Shown here: positions 4,737 through 42,748 of the stretch, in pieces
How positions within the stretch are numbered: the first letter of the stretch is position 1
How the letters are laid out: each line of letters begins with the position of its first letter
Assembly (NCBI RefSeq): GCF_001194135.2
Contig: NC_068992.1
Span: 43,340,520 to 43,385,332, forward strand
Length of the DNA stretch: 44,813 bases
Direction: 5' to 3'
Source: Octopus bimaculoides
Taxonomy: Eukaryota
Position numbers and translations under genes: made by a program
The notes under the pieces: model-generated
Databases searched by the model: none
What the model was told of the DNA's origin: nothing
Seen by the model: the letters and a program-made list of their open reading frames with translations, nothing else

Positions 4737-5174
4737 TTTTTTTTCTTTTCTACTCTAAGCACAAAGTTCGAAAATTTTGTGGGAGGGGGCCAGTCGATTA
4801 GATCGACCGCAGTATGCAACTGGTACTTAATTTATCGACCCCGAAAGGATGAAAGGCAAAGTCGCCCCCTGCGAAATTTGGGCTCAGAACGTAAAGACAG
4901 ACGAAATACTGATAAGCATTTACCCCGGCGTGCTAACGTTTCTTATTTCTTTACTGCCCACAAGGGGCTACAAACAGAGGGGGAAAACAAGGACAGACAA
5001 ACGGATTAAGTCGATTATATCGACTCCAGTTCATAACTGGTACTTATTTAATCGACCCCCGAAAGGATAAAAGGCAAAGTCGACTTCGGCGGAATTTGAA
5101 CTCAGAACGTAGCGGCAGACGAAATACCGCTAAGCATTTCGCCCGGCGGCTAACGTTTCTGCCAGCTCACCGCC
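4737..5174 (-). mobile_element. Composite SINE S1: B-tailed unit (5174-4944) followed by A-tailed unit (4943-4737)
   Basis: Reverse complement starts GGCGGTGAGCTGGCAGAAACGTTAGC (A box) and has GAGTTCAAATTCC (B box). AGAAACGTTAGC is duplicated at 5149-5160 and 4932-4943. The two units end in different tails (..CCCCTTGTGGGCAGTAAAGAAATAAGAA vs ..TGTGCTTAGAGTAGAAAAG). Confidence 0.9.
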
Positions 5175-5800: not shown

Positions 5801-7491
5801 CACTTCTGTTCTGACTTGATTTGATTAATATTGCAAGCGTCTTTGGGACTTGAAATCAAAACTAATCGATATACACGAAATGATAGAAAAGCATTGAAAC
5901 CCATTAGAATTCACCATTCTATTGGAATGAGGAGCCATCCCCAAAAGTATTACATTACAAGCACTGAAGGAAAACAACTGAGAACATTTTAAAAATGTAA
6001 ATAACCAAACAAAAAACAGAATGCAATTCAATAAAGCACTGCTGAATATTGTAAACTTTGGATTTGCCCAAAATTATTTGAATACTAGAAAAATCGGAAA
6101 AATCGAATGTTATTTGTTTGGCCTGTTGAAACAGACAAATCAATGCAAGCCATGTATATGGTTTTGTTGATGTCGTATTTTTTTGTATCTTGTTATTCTA
6201 TATTTGTTTTTGTTTTGTTTAGAGAAAGACGTTGTAAGCAGAGGGTTGTATTGTTTTTTCTGCCGTTTTATTGGTTTATTTTGTCTTCTTTTGGATAAGT
6301 TATATATATGTATCAACACAAACACACGTGTATACACACGCACATATGCATATATATATATATATATATATCCAAGGAATATAGAATTGTAAATAACAGT
6401 AACCTAATAAGGAAACTGCAAACAGAACGAAAAAAGCCAATAAAATACAATTGTTCATTTATGAAGATCCAAACAGAGTTTCGTAGGACCCTTAGGGTTA
6501 ATGTGCCAGACCACAAGCGATATTCAGCAGAGACAGAAACACGCACGCACGCACACGCACGCACACGCATACACACACACACAAACACACACATCCACAC
6601 ACATCCACGACGCACATATATGCACACACAGATATGTATGTATGTATGTATGTTTGTATGTATGCTTGTTTGTTTGTTCCTGTCGTTGATAATGATGTTG
6701 TTTCGCCGCCATAAACACCGATGTTACAAACACAACACACAAGAGAATACAATAAATACAAGATGCAGCTATTTTTCTTCCCGATGCAAACTTTTGTCAA
6801 TGAAGATAAAAAGTAATTTCTTTCTTCTAGTATTTCTTACAGCAAATTGGTAACTGATAGCCGGTTATTTGATCTATCGTAGATTCCAGTCACCTTAAGC
6901 TTAACTTTGCTTTCTATGGAGACGTTAATAATGAAATTATTTTATAAATGAAAAGCGTTTCGTTGACAAAATAGGGAGAGTGAGGGATGAGAAGTTTTAT
7001 GGATCCATTCTGTATATTTTGTGTTCAAATACATCTGAGGTGTAGTTTCTATTTTGTGCCTGTTGGGGTCTGATAGAATAAGGACCAGGCAGTTTAAGTC
7101 ATATCCTTCTTATTCTTGTCTTCTTCTCTTCCTTTTCCTCTATCCTTTCCCTTTTTTCTGCTATTTATATTTTCTCTTTTCTTCCTTCTTTTTCTCTTCT
7201 TCATCTTCTTCTTCTTTACTGTTTCTTTCTTCCTTTTTTTCTTTCTTTCTTTTTCCTTCCTTCCTTTCTTTAGTTGTCTTCCATGCTGCCGGTTTGAAGT
7301 TATCTTCCGCTCTTAGATCCAAAAGTTACAAACGGTTTCAAAGGCTTATTACAGCAAACTATATTACATCAAATTATGTAACACACTGCTTTGCCATTGT
7401 AGTGCATTTGAGTTCAAATCCTACACGGTATACTTTATCTACTCGGTATACATTATCCGTCACCCTGTTTAAGACCATTATGTTTAACTTT

Positions 7492-7706
7492 GGCGGTGAG
7501 CTGGCAGAAACGTTAGCACACCGGACTAAGAGTTTAGCGGTATTTCGACTGCCTTTACGTTCTGAGTTCAAATTCCGCCGAAGTCGACTTTGTCTTTCAT
7601 CCTTTCGAGGTCGATAAATTATGTACCATTTGCGTACTGGAGTCGATCTAATCGACTGGCCCACTCCCCAAAAATTTCGGGCCTTGTGCCTAGAGTAGGA
7701 AAAAAA
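7492..7706 (+). mobile_element. SINE S1, A-tailed monomer (empty-site form)
   Basis: GGCGGTGAGCTGGCAGAAACGTTAGC...GAGTTCAAATTCCGCCGAAGTCGACTTTG...GTCGATCTAATCGAC...GGCCTTGTGCCTAGAGTAGGAAAA; only one AGAAACGTTAGC (7506-7517). Confidence 0.9.

Positions 7707-14027: not shown

Positions 14028-14090
<63 letters not shown>
13928..14090. repeat. (TA)n(GA)n(GATA)n compound microsatellite
   Basis: Directly visible. Confidence 0.95.
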
Positions 14091-14134
14091 GGCGTGCTTG
14101 TTTCAATTTCCGTCTATCAGATCTACCCACAAGG

Positions 14135-14250
14135 TTTTATTCGGGCCGCGTGAAAAGTAGCATATACTTGCACAAGGTGTCACGCAGCGGGACAGAACCC
14201 AAAACTATGTGGTTGTGAAGTAAACTTCTTACCACACAGCCATGCCTACA
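14135..14250 (-). mobile_element. SINE S2 5' head fragment
   Basis: Reverse complement AGGCATGGCTGTGTGGTAAGAAGTTTACTTCACAACCACATAGTTTTGGGTTCTGTCCCGCTGCGTGACACCTTGTGCAAGT matches the head of the copy at 34007. Confidence 0.7.
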
Positions 14251-15411
14251 TTTATACACACATATATACTTGTATGTATGCATGTATGTATGTATGTATG
14301 TATATATGTACAGGTAGGCGTATATCTATTATTTAAGCTGAATAAAACTTCACGAGACTACGCTAGCTTTTGGATCATCTGGTATTAATGGAGTTAACAA
14401 TAAGCATGTGTTTATATACACATAGTTTTATAATACCGTTGAAATCTCGCCAAAAGTTTGAAAATTAAGTTGTAATTTGAGTGGTTGTCAAAATCCAACA
14501 GAGCGAATGTAATAATTTACAGCTTACGAATAGAAAATAGAAATGAAAATGAGAAAATGTGAATAAGGAAAGAAACATAAAAAGATACAATTAAACTATC
14601 TATACCAATGGTATAACAAACTCATATGCATATATATATACACATATAAATATGTATATATATATGTATATATATATATATATATATATNNNNNNNNNNN
14701 NNNNNNNNNNNNNNNNNNNNNNNNNNNNNNNNNNNNNNNNNNNNNNNNNNNNNNNNNNNNNNNNNNNNNNNNNNNNNNNNNNNNNNNNNNNNNNNNNNNN
14801 NNNNNNNNNNNNNNNNNNNNNNNNNNNNNNNNNNNNNNNNNNNNNNNNNNNNNNNNNNNNNNNNNNNNNNNNNNNNNNNNNNNNNNNNNNNNNNNNNNNN
14901 NNNNNNNNNNNNNNNNNNNNNNNNNNNNNNNNNNNNNNNNNNNNNNNNNNNNNNNNNNNNNNNNNNNNNNNNNNNNNNNNNNNNNNNNNNNNNNNNNNNN
15001 NNNNNNNNNNNNNNNNNNNNNNNNNNNNNNNNNNNNNNNNNNNNNNNNNNNNNNNNNNNNNNNNNNNNNNNNNNNNNNNNNNNNNNNNNNNNNNNNNNNN
15101 NNNNNNNNNNNNNNNNNNNNNNNNNNNNNNNNNNNNNNNNNNNNNNNNNNNNNNNNNNNNNNNNNNNNNNNNNNNNNNNNNNNNNNNNNNNNNNNNNNNN
15201 NNNNNNNNNNNNNNNNNNNNNNNNNNNNNNNNNNNNNNNNNNNNNNNNNNNNNNNNNNNNNNNNNNNNNNNNNNNNNNNNNNNNNNNNNNNNNNNNNNNN
15301 NNNNNNNNNNNNNNNNNNNNNNNNNNNNNNNNNNNNNNNNNNNNNNNNNNNNNNNNNNNNNNNNNNNNNNNNNNNNNNNNNNNNNNNNNNNNNNNNNNNN
15401 NNNNNNNNNNN

Positions 15412-15785
15412 TATATATTTGTAAGTCCTGGTGTTTTTCTTATGTATTTGTCTGAATATTTTTTTTATTATACCTAAGGCACCTACTATGATAGGAATTG
15501 TTTCTGTTTTTAGATTCCATATTCGAGTTACCTCTATTTCCAGGTCTTTGTATTTTGAAAGGTTTTCCATTTCTTTTAGGGAAACGTTGTCATCTGCTGG
15601 TATTGATACATCAATTAGGAAGCATTTTTTTTCTTCATGATCTTTGACAACTATATCTGGTCTATTGGCCTTAATTTCTCTATCTGTGTGTATTGGCATA
15701 TCCCATAGAATGGTTGCTTTCTCGTTTTCTGTGACCTTTTCTGGCGTGTGTTTATACCATCTTTTTTCTGTTGTTATTCCAAGTT
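15412..15785 (-). mobile_element. R4/Dong-like non-LTR retrotransposon, 5'-truncated RLE endonuclease fragment (family A); 3' end lost in the N gap
   Basis: GITTEKRWYKHTPEKVTENEKATILWDMPIHTDREIKANRPDIVVKDHEEKKCFLIDVSIPADDNVSLKEMENLSKYKDLEIEVTRIWNLKTETIPIIVGALG: RPD..D..K..KY..L restriction-like endonuclease signature. Confidence 0.9.
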
Positions 15786-19004: not shown

Positions 19005-19226
19005 GGACCAAAAGTAAAAAGAAAAATCGTGTACAAAATCCTTGCGGTATTTCTGCAGGACTTTTACGTTCTGAGCTCGAATTCCGCCGTGGCCAACATT
19101 GTCTTTCATCCTCCCGCGGTCAATAAAATAAATATCTCTGAAGCACTGGGGTCGATATGCGACCAAGCAGTCCAAGCACCACAAATTTCTGACCTAGCAC
19201 CAAAATTAGAAACAGTTATTATTATT
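19005..19226 (+). mobile_element. Diverged SINE S1 with (ATT)n tail
   Basis: TTTACGTTCTGAGCTCGAATTCCGCCGTGGCCAAC...CACTGGGGTCGAT...CAAAATTAGAAACAGTTATTATTATT. Confidence 0.6.
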
Positions 19227-19231
19227 TTCAA

Positions 19232-19457
19232 AGCGTTAAACTGGTAAAATCATTACCGTGCCGGTTCGAATGCTTAGCAGCATTTCTTCCGATCTTTACA
19301 TCCTGAGTTCAGTTGCCACCGAATTTGACTTTCATTCCATCAGGATCGACTAAATAAAGGACTAGTTGAGTCCTGGGGTTGATCTATTCGCCTAGCATCC
19401 TCTCTGAACAAGATTTCAGGCATTGTGCCTATAGTAGAAAGGATCATCATTATTATT
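19232..19457 (+). mobile_element. Diverged SINE S1 (A-type) whose (ATT)n tail abuts the retroelement array
   Basis: GAATGCTTAGCAGCATTTC...CTGAGTTCAG...GGCATTGTGCCTATAGTAGAAAGGATCATCATTATTATT. Confidence 0.7.
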
Positions 19458-19459
19458 TT

Positions 19460-20012
19460 TGAGTGAGAGAGCAGTGCATGCCATCAAAGCGAGGCTGGGG
19501 TACAAATATACGAAGCCCAGTGTACCCATCATGACTACTCGTTTGATAAGGGTACACCAGGCACATGCATCACAAACATCTGCGCGAAAAGGTGATCTCA
19601 TATCAAGATTAAGAGCGCATGACCTTGCAGGTGGGGCCCAGTTAGAGTTTTCTTCAGGTCGAGTAGCCCATCCCGCTCAAAAGGTCCCTCAATAAGGGTT
19701 GTTTAAGGATGTTGAACGAAAGACCCATGTTTCCAAAGGTGAGTTATTCAAACCCCAAAGAATTCCTCTCAACACATGTCTATGATGTTTCCCACTACTT
19801 CTACTCGTGATCAGAGATGCACATATCGTCAGCCATTAAGGGACAGACTCAACAGGTTAAGTTCAAACAAGTGACAAGCAAATCTGTGATATTGAGTAGA
19901 ATATTTAATGTAGCTTATCTTTTATACCAAGGAAAACAGTATACATGATAACACTTCCAATCAGTTGAGATGAGAAGTCATGAAAGCCACTGCCTGATAC
20001 TGCATCGGGGTA

Positions 20013-20013
<1 letters not shown>
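19460..20013 (-). mobile_element. ~550-bp TAA-flanked non-autonomous element, copy 1
   Basis: Clear end-to-end similarity to 22984-23529 and 23693-24253; flanked by (TAA)n. Strand is inferred from tail polarity shared with the neighbouring R4-like LINEs. Confidence 0.8.

Positions 20014-20067
<54 letters not shown>
20014..20067. repeat. (ATT)n/(TAA)n microsatellite, array spacer
   Basis: Directly visible. Confidence 0.98.
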
Positions 20068-20070
<3 letters not shown>

Positions 20071-20322
20071 TAGTTTTATTTTTATAACGTGCTTTCACTT
20101 CACTACCGAGCGCAGCTCTGTGCGCCTTGGGTACGTGCTGTGGTTTGCTGTGGTGCTCTTATGTTTACTGTATTGAAAGTGTTTTGCGTAGAATGTGTGC
20201 AGTACCCAGTAGTGCAATTTTCTGTATGTTATATATATTTATAAGTCCTCGTGTTTTTCTTATGTATTTGTCTGAATATTTTTTTTATTATACCTAAGGC
20301 ACCTACTATGATAGGAATTGTT
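20068..20322 (-). mobile_element. R4/Dong-like LINE 3' end (family A), 5'-truncated, (TAA)n on both sides
   Basis: TIPIIVGALGII, then after a frameshift KYSDKYIRKTRGLINIYNIQKIALLGTAHILRKTLSIQ*, a ~100-nt 3' UTR and an (AAT)n tail. Near-identical to 15412-15502. Confidence 0.9.
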
Positions 20323-20329
20323 ATTATTA

Positions 20330-20408
<79 letters not shown>

Positions 20409-20440
20409 CATCATTATTATTTTTATTATTATTATTATCA
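20323..20440. repeat. (ATT)n microsatellite, array spacer
   Basis: Directly visible. Confidence 0.98.
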
Positions 20441-20583
20441 TATACATTCAACAGATTAAACTGTTGGAAAAGAAAAAATCCTAACTCTGGGCTACAACAA
20501 GTAACCTTATATGCCAAGAACCCTCAACAGTATCCTTCCTGCCCCTAATAACACTGTTTTCTGGAGCTGTACAAAACTGGATT
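20441..20583 (-). mobile_element. R4/Dong-like LINE extreme 3' end (family C)
   Basis: Minus frame reads VQLQKTVLLGAGRILLRVLGI*, homologous to the family A terminus QKIALLGTAHILRKTL; followed by a short UTR and (ATA)n. Confidence 0.7.
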
Positions 20584-20584
20584 T

Positions 20585-22983
20585 TTATTATTATTATTTC
20601 TTTTTTATTACAGGTTTTGTTGGAACTGCTGGACTGTTGCGTAGCGGGCTTGGTACCATGCTATCCGTTCTTTTCAGTTATCTAATACTTTCCTTATTAT
20701 TATTTTTGTAACAGTTCTACTGGGCACTCTATTCTGATTTCCTCTATATTCTTCTTGACACCTGATACTGTTCCCTAGGATCCAACGATAATCGACACTA
20801 TCTTCACCTTCCTCATTTTCCATAGCCGGGCTATTTCGTACTTAAGAGGGTTGCATCTATCTTTTTATTGTCTTCCTTCTTGACTATTCGTGGGTCAAAG
20901 GTGTATGTAGCATCAACTATATAGTGCATGTGGTGCATCATGTCGACCACCACTAGAACCGGTCTGTTATGCTCCAACACCTGATCTGTTTGGATTGGGA
21001 AATTCCACAGGATTTTGCTAATCTCCGACTCCGCCACTCTCTGCGGTTTGTTCTCATACCATGTTTCGCCTCTCTCTAGCCCCCACTTTTCACACAGTTT
21101 CCAATATAGCACTTTCGTTACCTGACCATGTCTCCACAACTTATAGTGGCTTTCGTCATTTGTTTTTGATATCGGCAATGGGTTCATCCACTCAGATGCG
21201 GCACAGCGGAGACACTTGCTCATTCTTAAGTTTGGCCTTCCAATTCGTGGCCAAAGCTTGGTCTTCCGCTACCAGTATAGTGCTCTCAGTCTCTTTCTGT
21301 AGTGTTCCTTTCCTCACCTGTTGTGCCTACATGGAATTGATGATGTACTCACTTCTTGCGTAATTCTTCGTCATGTTCTTCTTATACTCCTTCCTTTATT
21401 TTCCCTTTTTTTCTCTGCTCTCAATATTCCCTCGTTCCTGACTGTCATTAGCAAGGTTTCCTTACTTTAGGCTAGGTATCTCATTAAACTCTCGAGTTCG
21501 ATACGGACACAGTCTTCCACACTTATCAGTCCCCTTTCTACATTTGTTCTCTTCATGTATAGGTGATCAGTGTCTGCAGGTGGATGATGGGCTCCATGCA
21601 TCTTTATGAGCTTTCTTGACTTCCTGTCCATCTCCTTTAGCTCCTCCTCTGTCCGCTTCAGGATTCCAGTGCCATACCGACCTTCTGCAACTGCGCGCGT
21701 GTTTATTGCCGAAATTAAGATTCTGGCATTCAGCTTTGAAACCAATATTTTTCTCACTCGCCATAGGTACTCTCTTTCTGTCTTTTCCTTTATGCTGTGG
21801 TGTTTGATTCAATCTGCCTCAAGTATTCTCAGGTATTTATAGCTGGATTGAGGTTGCATTGCCTTCATTAGTTCACCACTTGGCAACCCTATGCCTTCTG
21901 TTCTGACGAGCTTTCCTCGTTTCATCACCATCGTAGCACGTTTTGAGAGCCCAAACTTCATTTTAATATCATTGGAGAAATTCTACACAGACTGGACTAG
22001 ACTGTCCAGTTCTGCCTCACATTTATGAATAACAAGTCGTCCATGAATAACAAGTGCTTCAGTTTTTTCTTACCTCTTCCCAGGTCATACCCCAGCTTTG
22101 TTTTCTGTAGTATTTCACTCAAGGGGATCATTCCCAGCACAAAAATCAGTGGGGTCACATTGTCCCTCTGGAAGATTCCTCTCTTGATTTTCACCTCTCC
22201 TAATACTTGATTCCCTGCTGTCAATTCTGTTCGCCAACATTTCATATTGTTCCATATAAGGTTTCTGATGTTTCCTGCTACTCCATATATTTCCATTGTT
22301 CTTATTATCCGGCAGTCTGATATCATATCGTATGCTTTACGATAATCAATCCATGCCATACTCAGGTTTGTGTGTCTTCTTTTGCAGTTTCTGATAATTA
22401 CATAATCGATTAAGAGTTGATCCTTCATTCCCCCGACTCCTCTTTCGACACCATTTCTGTTCAGTAGCAGCCCATTTTTTACGAAGTATCTCTACAGTTC
22501 ACTGGCCAAAGCACCTGATATTAGTTGCCACATTAGCGAAAGACACGTAATTGGTCGAAAGATGGATGGAACTTTTCCCTTTCCAGGATCCTTGACGCAT
22601 AACAATGTTTTTTCCCCCTTTGTCATCTAGCTGGGTACTGCGTCTTCCTGCAAGCACTCATCTAGCAGTTTCGCAATCCTTTGATGGGAGCCCTCCCAGC
22701 TTCTTCATCCAATAACCTTGGACTCCATCTGGTCCTGAACTCTTCTAATTTCGGAATTCTCTTAACTGCTTTTTTATCATTCCTGCGGTTATTTTTATGT
22801 CTTCTTGGCCTTCTATATTTCTTAACCTATCATGAATTTCATGCAGCCACTCCACTTCATCGTTATGCTCTACAATTTAGTTCCAGATCCCTCTCCAGAA
22901 TGCACTGCTTTCCTCTGCATCTGACATCATTGTTACGTGTAACTGCCAATCTAGTTCCTGAAACAGTTTCTTCTAATTTTTTT
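20585..22983 (-). pseudogene. R4/Dong-like LINE (family B), 5'-truncated; RT, thumb, zinc knuckle and RLE disrupted by stops and frameshifts
   Basis: GPDGVQGYWMKKL; FRPITCLSLMWQL; [20 protein letters not shown]; [18 protein letters not shown]; HLLFMDDL; KLNARILISAINTRAV; RHGQVTKVLYWKLC; ILWNFPIQTDQVLEHNRP. 3' UTR ends in AATAATAATAA at 20585-20597. Confidence 0.95.
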
Positions 22984-23526
22984 CAATGAAAAAGCAGCGC
23001 ATTCCTTCAAAGTGACACTAGAGTACAAATATACAAAGCCCAATATACCCAACATGACTACACATCTGATAAAGGTACACCAAATACATGCATCACAACC
23101 GTATGTACGTGACATATTGATCTCATATCTAAATAAACTGTGCATGACCTTGCAGATGGGGCCCAGTTAGAATTCTCTTCAGGTTGATTAGCCCATTCCG
23201 CTCGAATGGTGACTGAACAAAGTTTGTTTAAGGATGTTGAACGAAACACCTAAATTTCCAGAAGTGAATTATTGAAATCCCAAAGAATTCCTCTCGACAA
23301 ATGGCTATGATGTTGCCCCACTACTTCTGCTCATGATCGGAGATGCACATATCATCAGCCACTCAACTGATTAAGGTCAAGCAACTGAGAAACAAATCAG
23401 TGATATTGAGCAGAATATTTGCTGTAGCCCATCTTTTATACCAAGACAAAACAATGTACATGATAACACTTCCAATCAGTTAAGATCAAAAGCCATGAGA
23501 GCTAATGTCTGGTACTGCATCAGGGC

Positions 23527-23529
<3 letters not shown>
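22984..23529 (-). mobile_element. ~550-bp TAA-flanked non-autonomous element, copy 2
   Basis: Homologous to copies 1 and 3; abuts the truncated 5' end of the family B LINE. Confidence 0.8.
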
Positions 23530-23596
<67 letters not shown>

Positions 23597-23613
23597 TATT
23601 ATTATTATTATCA

Positions 23614-23678
<65 letters not shown>

Positions 23679-23690
23679 TATTTTTATTTT
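23530..23690. repeat. (ATT)n microsatellite, array spacer
   Basis: Directly visible. Confidence 0.98.
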
Positions 23691-23692
23691 TT

Positions 23693-24253
23693 CATTGAGT
23701 GAGAGAGCAATGTATGCCATTAAAGTGACACTGGAGTACAAATATACGAAGCTCAATATACCTAACATGACTACAGATTTGATGAGGGTACACAAGGCAC
23801 ATGCATTACAACCATATGTGCACAACATGGTGATCTCATATCAAGATTAACAGCGAATGAACTTGCAGGTGGGGCCTAGTTAGAATTTTCTTTAGGTTGA
23901 GTAGCCCATCCTGCTCAAAAGGTTCCTGGATAAGGAAGGGTTGTTTGACGGATGATAAACAAAATACTCGTGTTCCCAGGGGTGAATTATTGAGACCCCA
24001 AAGAATCCCTCTCGACAAATGGCTATGATATTCCCCCACTACTTCTGCTCGTGATCAGAGATGCACCAAGGGACATGCTCAACTGGCTAAGGTCAAACAA
24101 CTAAACAACTGACAACCAATTTGTGGTATTGAAAAAAATATTTGCTGTAGTCCATCTTTTATACCAAGACAAAGCAATGTACATGATAACACTTCCAATC
24201 AGTTAAGATTACAAGCCATGAGAGCCACTGCCTGGTACTGCATCAGGTCATTT
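23693..24253 (-). mobile_element. ~550-bp TAA-flanked non-autonomous element, copy 3
   Basis: Homologous to copies 1 and 2, with a short internal deletion near 24065. Confidence 0.8.
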
Positions 24254-24256
24254 ATA

Positions 24257-24257
<1 letters not shown>

Positions 24258-24306
<49 letters not shown>
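24258..24306. repeat. (ATT)n microsatellite, distal end of the array
   Basis: Directly visible. Confidence 0.98.
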
Positions 24307-24308
<2 letters not shown>

Positions 24309-24580
24309 GTATTATCGTTGTTGTTGTTGTGTCGTTATCATCATCCTCATCATCTTTATAATTACTGAACGACATCACCATGTTCCAATGCAAAGGCGTC
24401 TTCAATATGAAACCATATTCACAGTAGAATAGAAATTTTTCCTCCAGCTTTACCCGGGGCACATTACGTAGAGCAAAATATTGTCCCCCCGCAAATATTC
24501 CAGCATCAAATCGATTCCTGGAGAAGCCATTTTACCAATTTAGATCTAATTGCAATATTGCAATTCAGATGGAGCCATAA

Positions 24581-29831: not shown

Positions 29832-31055
29832 TCAGGTTGGTGCAAAATTAATGTCCGATTTAAAGATCTAAGGTAAAAATGAATAAGCCAATAACTATGG
29901 AAATATGTATTCCTTAACATACTCTCCATTGCTTTCAACGACCTCATTCCATCTTTCAACAACCTTATAAATGCCTCGCTTGGAAAATTTTGTAGGTTTA
30001 GAACGAAAATATGAATCCAACTCATTTTCAGTCTCTTCTCTTGTTGTAAACTTTCTCTAGTCCTCGGAACAAATGGTAACCAGAAGGAGCAAGGTCAAGA
30101 GAATATGGAGAATGAGGCAGTATTTTCCAACCAAGTTCTTCCAAGAGGGTTTCGGTCAGTCGAGCTGTGTGAGGACGGGCATTATCGTGATGGAAGATGA
30201 CACTTTTTCTGTTAACCAAGGATGCTCGCTTTTGGTTCAGAACTGTTTTCAAACGACGAAGTTGCTCATAGTGCAGATTAGCATTAATTGTTTAGTTGCT
30301 GTCCAATAAATCATAATAGATTACTCCTTTAACATCCTACCATACACTCAACATGATCTTTTTTAGATGAAGTCCTCCTCGACTGATCCATGAACGGCAG
30401 CGTTTAACATTATGGTAAAGAATCCACTTCTCATTACCTGTAGTAAGCCTATCTAAACATGTTGCTTGAAAGTGTCACGAAAGCAATCATTGGCAACAAG
30501 TAACACCCTGCTGTCGATTCTGTGGAGACAGCTCGTGAGGGACCCATTTTCCAGCCCCTGAAACCTCTCAAATGTGTTTTAGCTAGCGTGCCACGGTTGT
30601 GTGTCCCACGTTTAACTATTTTGCAAGTTCCCTTGTGGTAATGGTAGAGTTGTCTGAGACATGAGCTTCAAACATTTCGGAATCAAGTTTTTTTGGACGA
30701 CCCTCTTTCGGCTCTTCTTTCAAAGTGAAATCATCACTTCGGAAATGAGAAAACCACCTCCTGCCACTTCTTTCATTCACTACATCATCCCCATAAATTC
30801 TCTGAATAGATCTTGCTGCCGCACTTGCAATAACACCTTTATGAATCTCGTAGAGTAAAAACATTTCCTATGTGATCTTTAGATGGGACAAACATGGTGG
30901 TAAAATTTTCTGAGAATTATCGCCTGAAGTTAGAAAATCTGAAAGAAAATAGTACAAATTAGACACAGAAATATCTTAAAACTCTAAGAAGAGGTTTAAA
31001 ATTCGCTCTGAAACATTTTTTGTAGAAATCAGACATTACTTTTGCCCCAACCTGA
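29832..31055 (-). mobile_element. Full-length (1224 bp) dead mariner, Hsmar1/cecropia-like
   Basis: TIRs TCAGGTTGGTGCAAAATTAATGTCCGATTT (29832) and reverse complement TCAGGTTGGGGCAAAAGTAATGTCTGATTT (31055); TA target duplications at 29830-31 and 31056-57. Transposase remnant ~30895-29895 with WVPHEL, TGNEKW, HHDNARPH and YSLDLAPSGYHLF. Confidence 0.95.
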
Positions 31056-31457
31056 TATATATATGTGGGTATGTTTGCATGTATGTTTGTATGTATTATA
31101 TATTATCTAAATACATATAAAAACACATATCTATATATATAGACTAAAGATATGCAAATATGTGTGAATATACCTGCCTGTATGACTACGTTCGTACATA
31201 GAAGTAGTCACGTGCGTATATTGCCATTTGTGAAATGAGTTGAAGGAGCATGCGCCAAAATTGGTTTATGAAAAGAGGATCTACCCCAGCGCCAAACAAG
31301 GATTTTTACATTTACTTTTATGGCATAATTTTTCTGGGGCATTTAAATCTGTAGACATGTTATTGTGGTACTATGAACTTACGCCTAAGATTACTGAGAT
31401 TCAATCAGTCATTTTGTGTTGCTATCTGTACGTAATTATCTTAAACGATAAACGTGA

Positions 31458-32075
31458 GCGTAGGGGAGGTTGTGTAGTAAGAAGCTTGCCGGGCGAAATG
31501 CTTAGCGGTATTTCGTCTGCCGTTACGTTCTGAGTTCAAATTCCGCCGAGGTCGACTTTGCCTTTCATCCTTTCGGGGTCGATAAATTAAGTACCAGTTA
31601 CGCACTGGGGTCGATGTAATCGACTTTATCCCTTTGTCTGTCCTTGTTTGTCCCCTCTATGTTTAGCCCCTTGTGGGCAATAAAGAAATAAGAAGCTTGC
31701 TTCCCAACCACTTGGTTTGGGGTTCACTCCCACGTGGTAGTTGTGGCAAGTGTCTTCTGTTATAGCCACGAGCTGATCAAAGCCTTGTGAGTGAATATGG
31801 TAGAGTTAAACTTAAAGAAGCCCGTCGTATATAGTATATATATGTATGTATGTGTGTATGAGTGTTTGTGTGTGTGTGTCCGTCCAACGTCGCTTGACAA
31901 CCGATGCTGGTGTGTTTATATCCCCGTAACCTAGTGGTTCGGTAAAAGAGACCGACAGAATAAGTACTAGGCTTACAAAGAATAAGTCCTGTGGTCGACT
32001 TGCTCGACTAAAGGCGGTGCTCCAGCATGGCCGTAATCAAAATGACTGAAATAAGTAAAAAGAATGAAAAGAAGA
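31458..32075 (+). mobile_element. SINE S2, near full length, interrupted in its head by an S1-B insertion
   Basis: The head TGTGTAGTAAGAAGCTTGC resumes at 31695 as GCTTGCTTCCCAACCAC..., and ends GGCGGTGCTCCAGCATGGCCGTAATCAAAATGACTGAAATAAGTAAAA. Confidence 0.9.
31490..31694 (+). mobile_element. SINE S1-B, 5'-truncated, inserted in the S2 head
   Basis: CGGGCGAAATGCTTAGCGG...GTTTAGCCCCTTGTGGGCAATAAAGAAATAAGAA, flanked by the direct repeat TAAGAAGCTTGC (31478-31489 and 31689-31700). Confidence 0.95.
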
Positions 32076-32879
32076 AAAAAAGAGAGTACGTGTGTACATA
32101 TATATAGCTATATATACATATACATGTATTTGTGTGTGTATTTAATAAATAGATAAATAATAAAATATGTTATTATTTAAATAATAAACTATGTTTAAAT
32201 TAACACTCCATGAATGATAAAATTACAATAAACAGAGGAAGTAACCTTAAAATGAAATGTACAGTCACTATTTGAAAATAGTCTAACACCACCCATGTGA
32301 TACATAGTGAATTACACCCCCATTAATATAAAAATTAATTTAACTAAAAATATATATTAAAACCTAAACTATCAACATTTAAAACTAATACATCTAAATA
32401 AATTAAAATTGTAGTAAAAACTGAAACTCTCACAACTAAAGGAGTCGGGGTTAAATAAATATATTGATTTGGATTCTTACTTTTATTTTATTTTTATTCT
32501 TTTCACGAGTAGAGACAGGAGTGATAGCCAGACTTTATAAACCCGATCTAAGGAGAATGTTAGTATGACCTAGTTCCTCATAGCTACAGCTAGCTATTGT
32601 CCACTGTGGTCGTAAATTAACTGCAAGCTATTTTTTGAAAGGAATCCAAATGGCACACATGCTGACAAACACAGACACAGAGGCACATGCTGAAACCTCA
32701 GTTTATAAGCAACTCTTCATTCATTAGGATCTGAACGAATATTTGTCACTTTTGCCCTGAAGAGATTTTTTCCTTTTAAATACATAATGTAATCTTACTT
32801 GCACAACATGAATAAAGGTAAGAAATTAAAACGTACGTAGGCGATATGAAACTAACTATTTTATTTTTTATATATTGTA

Positions 32880-33045: not shown

Positions 33046-34006
33046 TCAAACTTCAGCGTTGTTCTTCAATTTCTAAAGGATAAACAGTACCATATGCAAA
33101 ACAGTAGACATAGATGTCGCTACAGTTTATTTCCTTCCAAAGAGAAACATGTTTCGGTGCTATTTTTGGCACTTCTTTTCTTTGTTTCTTATGTAAGAGA
33201 TGGTAATTTAAATAAACATCAGAAATGTCTGTTGTAACATTAATCTAAAACAAAAGTGAAAATATAAACAAGACGTAGTCTCGAGCAATGGATGATGACT
33301 TCCGGGCACACAGTTTTATTTTTTGTTTATTGCTTCTTTTGTTTTTTTGTTTTTCTTTTTGCAAGTCAAATTATATAAACATTTAAAGTTCTATCTTAAA
33401 CGAAGCTAATCAATAGTATTTCACACAGAAAGTCATGAACACGACGTAAACAGACGGCTAATTTTACCAGATGTTTCTTTAAGAAAAAGTAACAATATAC
33501 ATTAAGAATCCCTTTGATTAAGATGAATTTTTTTGTGTCTCTCAAAATCATCGTGAGTAAACTAAAGCGTAAATTCCATTACCTAAACTGATTTACGTAA
33601 TTTTAGTTCCTGGGGGGTTATTTGCTTAATGCTAACCTGAATTGTATATGCCATCATCAGTTCTCCTGTCTCTAATTCAATGACGTAACAGCCGCTCATT
33701 TTAATTTCAAGGTCGTTTAGCAGACGACATGTTGAGCAATTACTGCTGCAAACCATTTTGAAAAAGAATTAACTGGACGCAACTTAAAGCATTTTGGTGT
33801 TAACCACTTCTTTATATATAAATATGCCGTTAAATATGTTGAACTATTTGCAATTTGGATAATGACAATGGTGCTATTGTGAACTGTCTCTAAAAATTAT
33901 TCCGAGATTGATAAAATCATATCAATGAAATATTTGAATCGCTGGTTAATTAACTAAATTCAGAAAAAAAGTGTAACCTTTTGATTAATGATAAATAGTC
34001 TCAATG

Positions 34007-34197
34007 GGCGCAGAAGTGGCTGTGTGGTAAGTAGTTTGCTTACCAACCACATGGATCCGGGTTCAGTCGCACTGCGTGGCACATTGGGCAAGCGTCTTCT
34101 ATTATAGCCTCGAATCGTCCAAAGCCTTGTGAGTGGATTTGGTAGACGGAAACTGAAAGAAGCTCGTCGTATATATCTATATGTGTGTGTGTGCGTG

Positions 34198-34228
<31 letters not shown>

Positions 34229-34400
34229 TTGTGTTTGTCCCCGACTATCGCTTGGTGTGTTTACGGTTCGGCAAAAGAGACCGATAGGATAAGTACTGGG
34301 CTTGCAAAGAATAAGTCATGGGGTCCAGTTCGACTGAAGGCGGTGTTCCAAAATGGCCGCAGTCAAGTGACTGAAACAAGTAAAAGAGTAAAAGAGTAAA
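34007..34400 (+). mobile_element. SINE S2, full length, with internal (GT)n and (GTAAAAGA)n tail
   Basis: A box TGGCTGTGTGG, B box GGTTCAGTC, CORE-like TTGGGCAAG segment, and tail GACTGAAACAAGTAAAAGAGTAAAAGAGT. Confidence 0.95.
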
Positions 34401-36646: not shown

Positions 36647-37048
36647 AATGAGATAAAAATCCAAGGCTGTGAAAGATTTCAGAACATTTATAAATAAGTC
36701 TTACAGCTGTTTCCTGGATATTTTATATATCCTTTCATCGGTGACGGTGTGAGAAAATGGTTAAGCAATAGTTATTCTAGGTAAGATATGAAATAAAAAG
36801 TGAAGTTGAGGAATGAAAACAGACGTGAGATATGCAGGGATATTTTATCTGTATTTCCATTATTTAGGCAGAATGGTATACATATAAGATTTCTTCACAT
36901 TGTGAGTAAGTTCCAATAGTATTTAAAATTGGTCATTCGAAGCATAGAGTTTATAAACGGTGTTATTGAATCGAGTTTTTTTGTTTTTTTTTTAATCCTG
37001 TTTATAAATGTTCTGAAATCTTTCACAGCCTTGGATTTTTATCTCATT
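36647..37048. mobile_element. Perfect 48-bp inverted repeat enclosing a hammerhead-like motif; probable Penelope-like remnant
   Basis: 36647-36694 is the exact reverse complement of 37001-37048. The Penelope assignment is inferred only from the ribozyme motif; no RT or GIY-YIG coding sequence is seen. Confidence 0.55.
36698..36745 (-). ncRNA. Minimal type I hammerhead ribozyme-like motif (degenerate core)
   Basis: Reverse complement GUCA-CCGAUGA-AA-GGAUAU-AUAAA-AUAUCC-AG-GAAA-C-AGCU-G-UA-AGAC: stem II of 6 bp, palindromic stem III, GUA cleavage triplet; core CUGAUGA mutated to CCGAUGA. Confidence 0.55.
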
Positions 37049-40030: not shown

Positions 40031-40514
40031 NNNNNNNNNNNNNNNNNNNNNNNNNNNNNNNNNNNNNNNNNNNNNNNNNNNNNNNNNNNNNNNNNNNNNN
40101 NNNNNNNNNNNNNNNNNNNNNNNNNNNNNNNNNNNNNNNNNNNNNNNNNNNNNNNNNNNNNNNNNNNNNNNNNNNNNNNNNNNNNNNNNNNNNNNNNNNN
40201 NNNNNNNNNNNNNNNNNNNNNNNNNNNNNNNNNNNNNNNNNNNNNNNNNNNNNNNNNNNNNNNNNNNNNNNNNNNNNNNNNNNNNNNNNNNNNNNNNNNN
40301 NNNNNNNNNNNNNNNNNNNNNNNNNNNNNNNNNNNNNNNNNNNNNNNNNNNNNNNNNNNNNNNNNNNNNNNNNNNNNNNNNNNNNNNNNNNNNNNNNNNN
40401 NNNNNNNNNNNNNNNNNNNNNNNNNNNNNNNNNNNNNNNNNNNNNNNNNNNNNNNNNNNNNNNNNNNNNNNNNNNNNNNNNNNNNNNNNNNNNNNNNNNN
40501 NNNNNNNNNNNNNN

Positions 40515-40840
40515 TTTCTACTCTAGGCACAAGGCCTAAAACTTTTGGGAATGGAGCCAGTCGAATAGATACACTCCAGTAAGCAACTAGTATTTAATTT
40601 AACGACCCCGTAAGGATGAAAGGCAAAGTCGACCTCGGCGGAATTTGAACTCAGAATGTAACATCAGACGAAATACCGCTAAGCATTTCGCCCGGCTTGC
40701 TAACGTTTCTTATTTCTTTATTACCCACAAGGGGCTAAACATAGAGGGGACAAACAAGGACAGGCAAAGGGATTAAGTCGATTACATCGATCCGCTAAGC
40801 ATTTCGACCGGCACGCTAACGTTTCTGCCAGCTCACCGCC
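40515..40840 (-). mobile_element. Composite SINE S1: internally deleted B-tailed unit plus A-tailed unit
   Basis: AGAAACGTTAGC duplicated at 40815-40826 and 40699-40710. The B unit jumps from GCTTAGCGG directly to ATCGATGTAATCGAC at ~40791, losing the B box. Confidence 0.9.
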
Positions 40841-42748
40841 TGAAAGCATGTATATGTGTGAATATGCAAACACCTATCGCAAGGAATCGTTTGCGTAGCT
40901 CATAGAAAGACTTGCGCACTTTGTTCCGAATCTATGCCTTTTGCGTTCAAATCCTGTCAAGATCAGCGCTAATATTTAACTTTTCAGTGTCCAAAAATAA
41001 AACTGAATCCTCAACGGTGGATTAGGGGAACTGTGGAAGACCGGGCGGTATACCTTAGTGTATTCACTGCGGACCTGCTTGATCTGGCTTCTCAGTAAGC
41101 AAACATTCCCTTGGATAACATTAGTAGTAACTTGTAGGAATAGCAAATTGTCGATATTGCATTGAACGCTCTTTCTTAAGCTCTGTATATGTGTATATTT
41201 ATTAAAATTTTACAAGAAGAGGTGTGCGAGTGACTTTGAAATTTCAGCCTGCTGATTGTATATATAGTTTACTGTTCTCTTAAGTTCAGATCAACAAAAA
41301 TGTACTCCACCCTGTGAAAGATAAATACCATTTAATGTACACCGCATTAAAATTATAGCTACTAAGATAAGAGCTCATAAATGTTCAAGTACCAGTGTCC
41401 TATTTTCCAAATACAACAAATTATGTACCCAGATAGCTTGGTGACACAAGGCATATTATTAAAATATTCCTAATCACGTGGTCTTAATGGCAAAAAGCTT
41501 TTAGTTTGATACAATGTACATTAAATGATATATATATAAGCCTTATTTGACCGGAGTAGAATAATCTCAAAATGCGTTCTGAGTTCTCTTCTGCATTCGA
41601 GTAAAAAAGGAAAATTATATTAATCATTGCTTAACATTGATTTTGTTTTAGTTATTATTTACTGTTATAACCAATCAAATTCTTTATAATGAATTTTAAC
41701 AATAGTAAATATCACATAGAAAATTGCATCCAAAATTAGCAAAACGTACACGGTTTTTAAAAAATAATAATAGTATACCATAACATTAAATGGCCACTCT
41801 TAGATAAGATGACAAGTTATATGCAATTTAATGCTTTCTATATGTTAGCTTTATTTATAACCAGGAAAATTATTAATCTTGAAACATCAAAACAAAATAT
41901 TATGGAACTAATCACATCGTGCTCCCATGAACGTAATTACCTCCATAAAAACCTTAATAACATAGAAATACGAATAACATGAAATTAGGATCGAAAACAA
42001 TTTTCCATTTTATTTTTAGTTTCATTCATTATTTTCTAGTCATATAAATAGCAGTTTCAATATTGTAAGTAATAGTGTTAGGATGACCTCATTTCTTTAA
42101 TATTGAACTAACAAGGACCTACATATAAAACATAATCACATCCCTATCCAAACTGAAGGTCTGAAATCCCAGTTGAACTCAAATTATATCGTGTATTTCA
42201 TGGCTAATCAGCTTTAAAGTCACTCTTGAATAAATAAGCTCCAAGAATTAGCTCACAAACCTTGATGACATCTAAATGGATACAGCAAATATATATCAAA
42301 AACGGTGCAATCACACACACAAATATACATTGGGGAATATATTTAACTGTTCAAATAAACATGCAAAGGTTTCAGAAGAAGGCGCATATGCAGTAATCAA
42401 AATGATTTATAGATACAAACACAAAAACATATTCATAATTACATTTGATCAAGCACGGAGAACTGAAAACATGCATAATAGTCAATAAGAATATGGCGTG
42501 AAACGTTTCAGGGCAAAGGAATGTTATTATTTTTATTCACATTTAATACAAAGATTAAAAGGACGAAAATAAATGCATAATCAAATAGTATCTAATTTAA
42601 CAAAATCCTGATGGAAATATTACTCATAAGCAACAACAATTTTCCAACAAAATCACACTCACACGGACACTCACNNNNNNNNNNNNNNNNNNNNNNNNNN
42701 NNNNNNNNNNNNNNNNNNNNNNNNNNNNNNNNNNNNNNNNNNNNNNNN

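What the first reader, a model, noticed from the sequence alone, without database searches (positions are those of the whole stretch)
31458..31710. A SINE that appears to target the tRNA heads of other SINEs: insertion with a clean 12-bp target duplication
Seen: an S1-B unit (tail ..GTTTAGCCCCTTGTGGGCAATAAAGAAATAAGAA) sits inside the D-arm/A-box region of an unrelated S2 SINE. It is flanked by TAAGAAGCTTGC at 31478-31489 and 31689-31700, and its 3' end (TAAGAA) overlaps the target. The other two B-tailed copies in the window (4944-5174, 40711-40840) also end at AGAA inside a SINE head with a 12-bp repeat (AGAAACGTTAGC). So 3 of 3 B-tailed copies lie in Pol III heads, although AGAA/TAAGAA sites are abundant in this AT-rich DNA. 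Established: some non-LTR families are target-specific for small-RNA genes or repeats (Tx1-clade Keno in U2, Dewa in tRNA-array spacers, CRE in SL RNA), and SINEs borrow their 3' tail from the partner LINE. Inference: S1-B is mobilised by a LINE whose endonuclease recognises tRNA D-arm-like sequence, making it a SINE-parasitising SINE that lands beside an intact Pol III promoter.
Basis: partly seen in the sequence, partly recalled or inferred. Interest (0 to 1): 0.78.

Follow-up and report, generated by a model that had tools for sequence, protein, structure and literature searches.

The report
Ordinary nested octopus SINE insertion
A young, 5'-shortened copy of an octopus SINE (S1-B) really did jump into the head of an older, unrelated SINE and left a 12-bp duplication, but the wider sample points to short tail-to-target sequence matches and a general habit of S1 SINEs piling up head-to-tail, not to a SINE that homes on tRNA-like heads.

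Summary
TAAGAAGCTTGC occurs exactly twice in the window (31478-31489 and 31689-31700), flanking a 199-bp S1-B copy. Three other S2 copies read straight through the site, so this is a true nested retroposition with a target-site duplication.

- The "12-bp TSDs" of the other two B-tailed copies are the first 12 nt of a ~150-bp S1/S1 direct repeat. Only AGAA is shared between the B tail and the S1 head.
- 76 kb of Octopus bimaculoides genome and several Logan contigs contain full-length S1-B monomers with their own heads and their own TSDs in non-SINE DNA.
- B tails also join S1 at positions ~50 and ~118.
- A-tailed S1 copies abut S1 heads just as often as B-tailed ones (5/12 versus 2/4).
- B-B-A and B×5-A arrays exist.

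S1 head-to-tail stacking is therefore real and strongly non-random, but it is neither specific to the B tail nor tied to a D-arm. The best explanation is priming on AAGAA/TAAG-like sites by the A/G-rich tail, with microhomology or homology resolving the 5' end. Endonuclease recognition of tRNA D-arms remains possible at about 10%. A genome-wide tabulation could not be run.

The parts
31456..31489 (+). 5' part of the host S2 SINE head, with a degenerate A-box-like motif. It ends in TSD copy 1.
   Evidence: Alignment with S2 copies at 34005, 17151 and 14242; A/B-box scan.
31478..31489 (+). Target-site duplication, copy 1: TAAGAAGCTTGC.
   Evidence: Exact 12-mer, 2 matches in the window against 0 expected.
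31490..31688 (+). Inserted S1-B SINE. It is 5'-truncated at S1 position ~30, so it has no A-box of its own; the B-box-like GAGTTCAAATTCC lies at 31532-31544. The B tail reads through to 31694, overlapping TAAGAA of the TSD. It is the youngest S1 copy seen, at 2-3 substitutions in ~199 sites against the subfamily consensus.
31689..31700 (+). Target-site duplication, copy 2: TAAGAAGCTTGC. Its first 6 nt are identical to the end of the B tail, giving a 6-nt tail-target microhomology.
   Evidence: the B-tail consensus ends ...GAAATAAGAA.
31701..32080 (+). Remainder of the host S2 SINE: B-box-like GGTTCACTCCC, a CTTGGGCAAG-type core, an internal TA/TG microsatellite, and the tail ...ACTGAAATAAGTAAAAAGAATGAAAAGAAG.
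4940..5174 (-). Dimer 1, upstream unit: S1 with a full head and a B tail.
4742..4943 (-). Dimer 1, downstream unit: S1-A starting at S1 position 19 (ACGTTAGC) with an A tail. The AGAA at 4940-4943 is shared with the B tail.
40707..40841 (-). Dimer 2, upstream unit: S1 with a full head and a B tail, carrying a ~105-bp internal deletion.
40515..40710 (-). Dimer 2, downstream unit: S1-A from position 19. Its A tail runs into an N gap.
7492..7706 (+). Monomeric S1-A with an unoccupied AGAAACGTTAGC (7506-7517). Serves as a control head.
34005..34395 (+). Uninterrupted S2 copy. Serves as the empty-site reference.
14079..14245 (-). Uninterrupted S2 head with TAAGAAGTTTAC: an unoccupied target motif.

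Best explanation
The feature at 31458-31710 is an ordinary nested retroposition.

**The S2 event.** An S1-B SINE RNA was reverse-transcribed at a nick in an older S2 SINE. The target's TTCTTA, the complement of TAAGAA, paired with the 3' end of the RNA (...AUAAGAA). The staggered second nick 12 nt downstream produced the TAAGAAGCTTGC duplication. The copy was 5'-truncated at S1 position ~30, where a GC microhomology joins it to the target. The site was chosen by a short tail-to-target match. S2 heads carry TAAGAA in their consensus and S2 is abundant, so they are hit now and then.

**The two 'B-tail in S1 head' composites.** These belong to a general S1 habit. S1 copies of either tail type accumulate head-to-tail because S1 tails end in AAGAA-type sequence and the S1 head holds AGAA at positions 15-18. 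New copies are therefore primed at, or resolved against, these motifs in resident copies, with homology helping the 5' join. This gives the recurrent ...ATAAGAA|ACGTTAGC junction, dimers and longer arrays.

**Shown versus inferred.** Shown: the insertion, the TSD, the empty site, the truncation, the general tandem bias, the monomeric S1-B copies elsewhere, and the variable junction positions. Inferred: priming by microhomology and the order of events within dimers.
For: **The insertion itself.** TSD and empty site. The insert is the youngest S1 copy (2/199 and 3/198 substitutions) inside an old S2 (~72% identical to its paralogue).

**Chance level for the S2 hit.** TAAGAA occurs 48 times in the window and 45 of those pre-existed. 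Three of the 45 (6.7%) lie in S2 heads. One S2 head is occupied, against 3 unoccupied S2 heads confirmed in the window and about 10 apparently uninterrupted ones in L004 inferred from BLAST hit spans.

**The dimer '12-mers' are not TSDs.** They are the start of a ~150-bp homology.

**S1-B inserts elsewhere.** Monomeric full-length S1-B copies with their own heads and TSDs lie in non-SINE DNA in O. bimaculoides (L004) and in Logan contig L007. The L006 B tail runs into unique DNA.

**Other junction positions.** Position ~50 (L006) and position ~118 (L001).

**A tails behave the same way.** 5/12 A tails are followed by S1 heads, including ...GAAAAGAA|TTGTCAGCACGCC.

**Tail targeting shown directly.** In the L004 triple the 3'-most unit is much younger (90.5% against 72-76%). 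A 16/19 TSD flanks units 2+3.

**Arrays argue against a single amplified dimer.** B-B-A (L010) and B×5-A (L005) arrays have units closer to the consensus than to each other, and the age gradient runs in opposite directions in the two arrays.

**Background.** SINEs make up 11.6% of the O. vulgaris genome, with hundreds of SINE families (PMC13282606).
Against: - The unselected sample is tiny: 4 B tails in about 103 kb. Of these, 2 are dimers and 1 is in an S2 head. The fourth lies only ~10 bp upstream of, and antisense to, a third tRNA-like SINE (S3). None is far from a SINE 5' end.
- The S1 and S2 sites occupy comparable places just 3' of, or inside, the A-box-like motif.
- The Logan contigs were found through S1-derived ORFs, so they are biased towards composites.
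- Microhomology priming is inferred, not demonstrated.
- No partner LINE was identified.
Confidence: 0.68

Rival explanations
1. S1-B is mobilised by a LINE whose endonuclease recognises D-arm-like sequence (AGAA.C.TT.GC), or is tethered to Pol III-bound heads. S1-B therefore homes on the heads of other SINEs.
For: - One insertion lies in the S2 head, with a chance of about 3-7% per event.
- The junction ...AAGAA|ACGTTAGC is seen in both window dimers, in the conceptual translation of at least 10 independent ORFs, and in 7 DNA junctions in L005 and L010.
- The upstream B unit is younger in dimer 2 (p=0.026) and in L010 (76/68/64%).
- The L004 monomer lies 10 bp from the 5' end of an S3 SINE.
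- L1-Tx1-clade LINEs, a clade with target-specific members, are listed as recently active in O. vulgaris.
Against: - Full-length S1-B monomers have TSDs at sites unlike a D-arm: TATAAGGCCTAAG and the imperfect 16-17-bp TSD of L007 (ATATTATCTGAGAGAAT / ATATCACCTGACAGGGAAC).
- A B tail runs into unique DNA.
- Junctions occur at S1 positions ~50 and ~118.
- A-tailed copies show the same head adjacency.
- In L005, L011 and the L004 triple the downstream units are the younger ones.
- The dimer 'TSDs' are undefinable.
- Neither head scores as tRNA.
Confidence: 0.1
2. The B-A composite is a dimeric SINE family, analogous to Alu left and right monomers, that amplifies as one unit. The two window dimers are copies of it and the S2 case is an unrelated chance hit.
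For: - The junction is identical in many diverged copies.
- An A-rich linker (AATAAAGAAATAAGAA) joins the units.
- Dimer 1 is flanked as a whole by TGC(C)TGGCG.
- The L and R units of dimer 1 are equally diverged (6.2% against 8.5%, not significant).
Against: - d1R and d2R are no closer to each other than to an unrelated monomer (83.6% against 84.2/83.6%).
- The L and R units of dimer 2 differ in age (p=0.026).
- B-B-A and B×5-A arrays, an A-to-position-20 junction and A-to-full-head tandems show that the junction forms repeatedly with different partners.
Confidence: 0.15
3. The composites are made in a single retroposition event. The reverse transcriptase jumps from one S1 RNA, at AGAA near its 5' end, onto the 3' end of another S1 RNA, producing concatemers as in chimeric retrogenes.
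For: - The acceptor is always the complete 3' end of the upstream unit.
- Junctions show 4-nt microhomologies (AGAA, ATAA).
- Template switching is the mechanism usually invoked for SINE module exchange (PMC4758252).
- Units of several pairs are of similar age (dimer 1; L004 4215-4539).
Against: - Ages clearly differ within some arrays: the L004 triple at 72% against 90.5%, and dimer 2 at p=0.026.
- The S2 case has a bounded 12-bp duplication on both sides, which would need two switches.
- B tails can prime on their own, as the monomers with TSDs show.
Confidence: 0.08

Closest known systems
Alu-in-Alu insertions and dimeric or multimeric SINEs (Alu left/right monomers; tRNA-SINE dimers and trimers such as those cited in PMC4758252)
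   Same: Related monomers are joined head-to-tail through an A-rich linker. New copies land in the A-rich tails of resident copies. Nested copies are flanked by TSDs.
   Different: - Here the linker is the A/G-rich B tail, and the downstream unit lacks its first 18 nt through an AGAA overlap.
- Arrays reach at least 6 units.
- The junction seems to form repeatedly rather than once.
Target-specific non-LTR retrotransposons (Tx1-clade Keno/Dewa, R1/R2, CRE/NeSL; named from established knowledge, Kojima & Fujiwara 2004 as cited)
   Same: The junction is identical in many copies, and the insertions lie in or beside small-RNA-type sequence.
   Different: The family also inserts, with ordinary TSDs, into unrelated DNA. 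Junction positions vary (19, ~50, ~118, and upstream of full heads). Both tail types behave alike. No specific endonuclease or partner LINE is known.
Pol III-proximal integration (Ty3, Dictyostelium TRE5-A; from established knowledge)
   Same: The four unselected B tails lie between about -10 and +35 of SINE 5' ends.
   Different: These SINE copies have not been shown to be transcribed. The host A-box is degenerate. Other B tails lie in unique DNA. The sample is far too small.
Chimeric retrogenes made by LINE RT template switching (Buzdin 2003, cited in PMC4758252) and microhomology-mediated 5' junctions of truncated L1 insertions (established knowledge)
   Same: Short microhomologies (AGAA, GC, ATAA) sit at the joins, and the complete 3' end of the upstream unit is retained.
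   Different: Age differences within some arrays, and bounded TSDs, show that at least some composites are sequential insertions.

Membership tests
LINE-dependent (TPRT) nested SINE insertion | Direct target-site duplication bounding the insert | tested here: met
   TAAGAAGCTTGC occurs twice, against 0 expected.
LINE-dependent (TPRT) nested SINE insertion | Empty site in paralogous or orthologous copies of the host | tested here: met
   S2 copies at 34005, 17151 and 14242 read through the site. Orthologous loci were not available.
LINE-dependent (TPRT) nested SINE insertion | Insert ends with the complete family 3' tail; 5' truncation is allowed | tested here: met
   The B tail is complete and the insert starts at S1 position ~30.
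LINE-dependent (TPRT) nested SINE insertion | Partner LINE sharing the 3' tail | tested here: not met
   nhmmer with the B-tail profile found nothing in the window or L004 beyond the S1-B copies themselves. The genome was not searchable.
Target-specific retrotransposon system (tRNA/SINE-head homing) | Nearly all copies sit at one target sequence | tested here: not met
   The L004 and L007 monomers and the L006 tail lie in non-head DNA. Junctions also occur at S1 positions ~50 and ~118.
Target-specific retrotransposon system (tRNA/SINE-head homing) | Constant TSD length and junction | tested here: inconclusive
   TSDs of 12 bp (S2), 12-13 bp (L004) and 16-17 bp (L007). In the dimers the TSD cannot be defined, because the repeat extends ~150 bp.
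Target-specific retrotransposon system (tRNA/SINE-head homing) | Specificity belongs to the element with that tail, so a control family lacks it | tested here: not met
   A tails are followed by S1 heads at 5/12 against 2/4 for B tails, p=1.
Target-specific retrotransposon system (tRNA/SINE-head homing) | Insertions at the same position in genuine tRNA genes | not testable with these tools
   ARAGORN found no tRNA genes in the window. L004 was not scanned, and the octopus genome is not searchable here.
Dimeric SINE family amplified as a unit | The same monomer-monomer junction in many dispersed copies | tested here: met
   Seen in both window dimers, in at least 10 ORFs carrying ..ANVS|YFF.., and in L005, L010 and L011.
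Dimeric SINE family amplified as a unit | Both monomers of a copy have the same age and co-cluster with other dimers | tested here: inconclusive
   Dimer 1: 6.2% against 8.5%, not significant. Dimer 2: 3.0% against 9.8%, p=0.026. d1R and d2R are not closest relatives.
tRNA-derived SINE head (S1, S2) | Match to a tRNA covariance model or tRNA finder | tested here: not met
   No RF00005 hit at E<=10 on 7480-7610 or 33990-34120, and ARAGORN found 0.
tRNA-derived SINE head (S1, S2) | A-box and B-box motifs at Pol III spacing | tested here: inconclusive
   - S2 (34005): TGGCTGTGTGG (1 mismatch) at position 14; B-box-like motif at position 57.
- S1: TGGCAGAAACG at position 11; AGTTCAAATTC at position 74.
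- Interrupted S2: A-box motif degenerate.
CORE-SINE (octopus OR1/OR2) for S2 | Shared ~60-bp CORE domain | not tested
   This is a lead only. The papers state that octopus OR1/OR2 are CORE-SINEs, and S2 has CTTGGGCAAG-type sequence. No reference sequence was available for comparison.

The most novel reading that the evidence does not exclude
S1 retroposition in octopus is genuinely directed to the 5' ends or heads of resident Pol III-type SINEs. The direction would come from the partner LINE's endonuclease or from tethering to Pol III factors. S1 elements would then parasitise one another and S2, building arrays at a fixed ...AAGAA|ACGTTAGC junction.
Probability: 0.1. Interest if true: 0.7.

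Novelty: new member of a known kind. Interest (0 to 1): 0.27.

Why it matters
As it stands, this is a textbook nested SINE insertion and matters little in itself.

The by-product is of modest interest to transposon specialists. In octopus, whose genome is unusually rich in SINEs, S1 elements stack head-to-tail far more often than chance, through a recurrent microhomology junction, into dimers and arrays of at least six units. This may help explain the hundreds of apparent SINE 'families' reported for these genomes. It is also a trap for repeat annotators.

If the minority reading were true, it would be the first SINE/LINE pair in an animal known to home on the heads of other SINEs.

Tried and rejected
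**Public DNA scans.** Exact-pattern scans for the B tail and the S1 core gave 0 hits in metagenome contigs (2 scans), genome contigs (2) and viral contigs (1).

**First protein search.** Searching with the junction-spanning ORF gave 1 hit, P0001/L001.

**RT search.** The RT ORF search gave only 50-57% identical RTs. The one contig fetched from them, L002 (ENA, 8.8 Mb), holds no S1 or S2.

**Window ORF look-ups.** ORFs 31240-31533 and 21997-22428 are not on record. P0123 is not on record either.

**Literature.** Full-text search for S1 sequence strings gave 0 papers.

**Rfam and ARAGORN.** Neither gave a tRNA call for the heads.

**Ideas considered and dropped.**
- That S1-B is natively headless. 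L001, L004 and L007 show B units with their own heads.
- That arrays arose by local unequal crossing-over. L005 units are closer to the family consensus than to their neighbours, although very early duplication cannot be excluded.
- That position 27 is a strict A/B diagnostic site. The L004 B monomer has the A-type state.
- A consistent age polarity within arrays. L005, L011 and the L004 triple have younger downstream units, while dimer 2 and L010 have younger upstream units.

Full report
**Context**

The window is 36% G+C, has many N gaps and is full of SINEs, a LINE RT remnant and a mariner remnant. It comes from an octopus genome. S1-derived ORFs recur in Octopus bimaculoides protein LOC106868243 and in Logan contigs.

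Two SINE families matter here.
- **S1** starts GGCGGTGAGCTGGCAGAAACGTTAGC... and comes with two alternative 3' ends. The A tail is ...GGCCTTGTGCCTAGAGTAGAAAAGAATATA. The B tail is ...TAATCCCTTTGTCTGTCCTTGTTTGTCCCCTCTATGTTTAGCCCCTTGTGGGCAATAAAGAAATAAGAA.
- **S2** is a longer SINE with a CTTGGGCAAG-type core and an internal TA/TG microsatellite.

**Observation**

TAAGAAGCTTGC occurs at 31478-31489 and 31689-31700 and nowhere else, against 0 expected. Between the two copies lies an S1-B copy that starts at S1 position ~30 and ends with the full B tail.

Three other S2 copies in the window (34005, 17151, and 14242 on the minus strand) read straight through GTAAG(A/T)AG(C/T)TT(G/A)C. This is therefore a genuine insertion with a 12-bp TSD into an old S2. 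The last six bases of the tail (TAAGAA) equal the first six of the TSD.

The insert is the youngest S1 copy seen, at 2-3 substitutions per ~199 sites against the subfamily consensus.

nhmmer finds exactly three B tails in the window.

**What the other two copies are**

Each is a composite: an S1 with a full head and a B tail, followed by an S1 from position 19 with an A tail.

It is also present in the lone S1-A at 7506-7517. In the composites it is only the beginning of a ~150-bp direct repeat between the two units, which are 83-86% identical.

The only sequence shared between the end of the B tail and the S1 head is AGAA. These are therefore not clean TSDs, and the three cases are not three equivalent events.

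**Chance level for the S2 event**

SINE heads make up 2.4% of the non-N window. Of the 45 pre-existing TAAGAA sites, 3 (6.7%) lie in S2 heads, because TAAGAA is part of the S2 head consensus.

One S2 head is occupied. Three S2 heads in the window are confirmed unoccupied, and about 10 more in L004 appear uninterrupted from BLAST hit spans.

A single hit at roughly 3-7% per event, picked out after the fact, is weak evidence.

**Reaching outside the window**

No public DNA collection on hand holds octopus sequence. The reverse strand of S1 is an open reading frame, however, so S1 copies appear as 'proteins'.

An HMMER scan of the representative library found 34 such ORFs. At least ten read ..ANVS|YFF.. 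in conceptual translation, which is the same B-tail-to-S1-position-19 junction.

One hit, P0122, is an annotated O. bimaculoides protein. It gave L004: 76 kb of chromosome CM046612.1, of which 62 kb is non-N. The Logan contigs L005-L012 gave DNA for further copies.

**What these loci show**

1. *S1-B can be a complete monomer outside any SINE.* L004 holds one B tail, on a complete S1-B monomer (40900-40604, minus strand). It has its own head and the TSD TATAAGGCCTA(A)G, and lies in neither S1 nor S2. L007 holds another full-length S1-B with an imperfect 16-17-bp TSD in unique DNA. In L006 a B tail (...GGGTAATAAAGAAATAAATAAAAA) runs into unique AT-rich DNA. S1-B is thus a normal SINE with its own head that can insert elsewhere.

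2. *The junction position varies.* B tails also join S1 at position ~50 (L006) and position ~118 (L001).

3. *A tails do the same.* In the unselected sample (window plus L004, about 103 kb), 5 of 12 readable A tails are followed within 25 bp by an S1 head.
   - Three are followed by a full head.
   - One is followed by a head starting at position ~9.
   - One starts at position ~20: ...GTAGAAAAGAA|TTGTCAGCACGCC.
   - For B tails the figure is 2 of 4 (Fisher p=1).
   - Random placement would give well under 1%.

4. *Tail targeting is seen directly.* In the L004 S1-A triple the 3'-most unit is far younger (90.5% against 72-76% identity to the query). A 16/19 TSD flanks units 2+3. A young S1 landed exactly at the tail of an older one.

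5. *Arrays exist.* L010 is B-B-A and L005 is B×5-A, all with the AAGAA|ACGTTAG-type junction.
   - L005 units are closer to the family consensus (63-72%) than to each other (51-62%).
   - The age gradient rises 5' to 3' in L005 and falls in L010.
   - In window dimer 2 the upstream B unit is less diverged than the downstream A unit (4/132 against 19/194, p=0.026). In dimer 1 the two are alike.

The junction therefore forms repeatedly, with different partners and in both temporal orders. This argues against a single amplified dimer, and equally against a one-way rule that B inserts into heads.

**Mechanism**

The simplest account covering all cases is as follows. S1 RNAs end in A/G-rich sequence: ...AAATAAGAA or ...AAATAAATAA for the B tail, and ...AAAGAATATA for the A tail.

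First-strand synthesis is primed where the nicked target is complementary to that end. This fits the TSDs beginning TAAGAA, TATAAGG and TATAT.

The 5' end is then sealed by microhomology: GC in the S2 case, and AGAA at S1 positions 15-18 against an upstream ...AAGAA. When the target is itself an S1, homology can do the sealing instead.

S1 tails, the S1 head and the S2 head all carry such motifs. S1 copies therefore stack on each other and occasionally hit S2 heads.

Shown here: the insertion, the TSDs, the truncation, the tandem bias, the monomers and the variable junctions. Inferred: the priming and end-joining steps.

**Head anatomy**

Neither head is recognised as tRNA by Rfam or ARAGORN.

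A-box-like and B-box-like motifs are present. The S2 site lies just 3' of the A-box-like motif, and the S1 site lies inside its own. In the interrupted S2 copy, however, that motif is degenerate. 'Beside an intact Pol III promoter' is therefore not shown.

All four unselected B tails lie within about -10 to +35 of a SINE 5' end. The L004 monomer sits 10 bp upstream of, and antisense to, a third tRNA-like SINE, S3. Two arrays show younger upstream B units. I put about 10% on real head-directed or Pol III-directed targeting.

**Comparison with known systems**

This works like Alu-in-Alu-tail insertion, dimeric SINE formation, and microhomology-mediated LINE/SINE junctions.

It fails the defining tests of target-specific retrotransposons. 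Copies are not confined to one target, and a control subfamily behaves the same way.

SINEs are 11.6% of the O. vulgaris genome, with some 900 'recently active' SINE families reported (PMC13282606). Composite formation of the kind seen here may contribute to that number.

**Verdict**

The feature is an ordinary nested insertion within a SINE family that has a strong but unspecific tendency to multimerise. The genome-wide tabulation and orthologous-locus comparison that would settle the residual question could not be run with these tools.

Noticed in passing
window 4742-5174, 19036-19442, 40515-40841; L004 4215-4539, 65993-66580, 69437-69760: S1 SINEs of either tail type sit head-to-tail far more often than chance. 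Of 16 readable S1 3' ends in about 103 kb, 7 are followed within 25 bp by an S1 head.
   Followed up: yes
L005 1-1985 (Logan SRR11869384); L010 3204-3803 (Logan SRR11869391): Tandem arrays of S1 units share the same AAGAA|ACGTTAG junction: at least 5 B-tailed units plus a terminal A-tailed unit in L005, and B-B-A in L010. Units are closer to the consensus than to each other, and the age gradient runs in opposite directions in the two arrays.
   Followed up: partly
L004 40915-41190 (+): A third tRNA-like SINE, 'S3' (GGTTTGTGACCCAGTGGTTACG...GGTTTCAATTCCTGG...), has its 5' end ~10 bp from the TSD of the monomeric S1-B, in antisense orientation. A related copy interrupts an S1 at L004 69785-69900. 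53-bp direct repeats (40476-40528 and 41238-41290) bracket the S1-B plus S3 pair.
   Followed up: partly
L004 69675-69700: A (TTAGGG)3 telomere-like run has apparently grown out of the GCTTAGCGG motif of an S1 head.
   Followed up: no
window 31960-32080 and 34300-34400 versus the S1 body: - The S2 3' region and the S1 body share a motif block (ATAAGTAC.AG ... GGTCGA..T..TCGACT).
- The S2 tail (ACTGAAATAAGTAAAAAGAA...) shares GAAATAAG with the B tail, hinting at a common module or a common partner LINE.
- The B tail carries AATAAA 14 nt before its end.
   Followed up: no
window 40792-40800 (dimer 2 upstream unit); protein P0147: A ~105-bp internal deletion in the B unit of dimer 2 joins GCTTAGCGG to ATCGATGTAATCGACT. 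A Logan ORF shows a similarly shortened B unit.
   Followed up: no
window 20831-22428 (-), 14596-15699 (-), 20229-20447 (-): Frameshifted LINE remnant with an RVT_1 domain; the best relatives are 50-57% identical. LINE C-terminal ORF fragments are repeated at 15412-15502 and 20232-20322 (98% identical).
   Followed up: partly
window 30028-30864 (-): Mos1-type mariner transposase remnant, with an HTH_48 domain and a DDE-region motif HHDNARPH.
   Followed up: partly
window 19450-20085, 22967-23599, 23677-24315: An unclassified ~636-bp repeat in three copies (~81% identical), two of them adjacent in tandem.
   Followed up: no
window 12940-12989/13000-13049; L004 40784-40798: Exact duplicates on either side of 10-N gaps. 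These are assembly artefacts, not biological repeats.
   Followed up: no
window 36647-36694 / 37001-37048: Exact 48-bp inverted repeat about 300 bp apart.
   Followed up: no
L004 10001-66298 (gene LOC106868243): The annotated O. bimaculoides 'protein' P0122 is largely a reverse-strand translation of tandem S1 SINEs, so it is probably a spurious gene model.
   Followed up: partly
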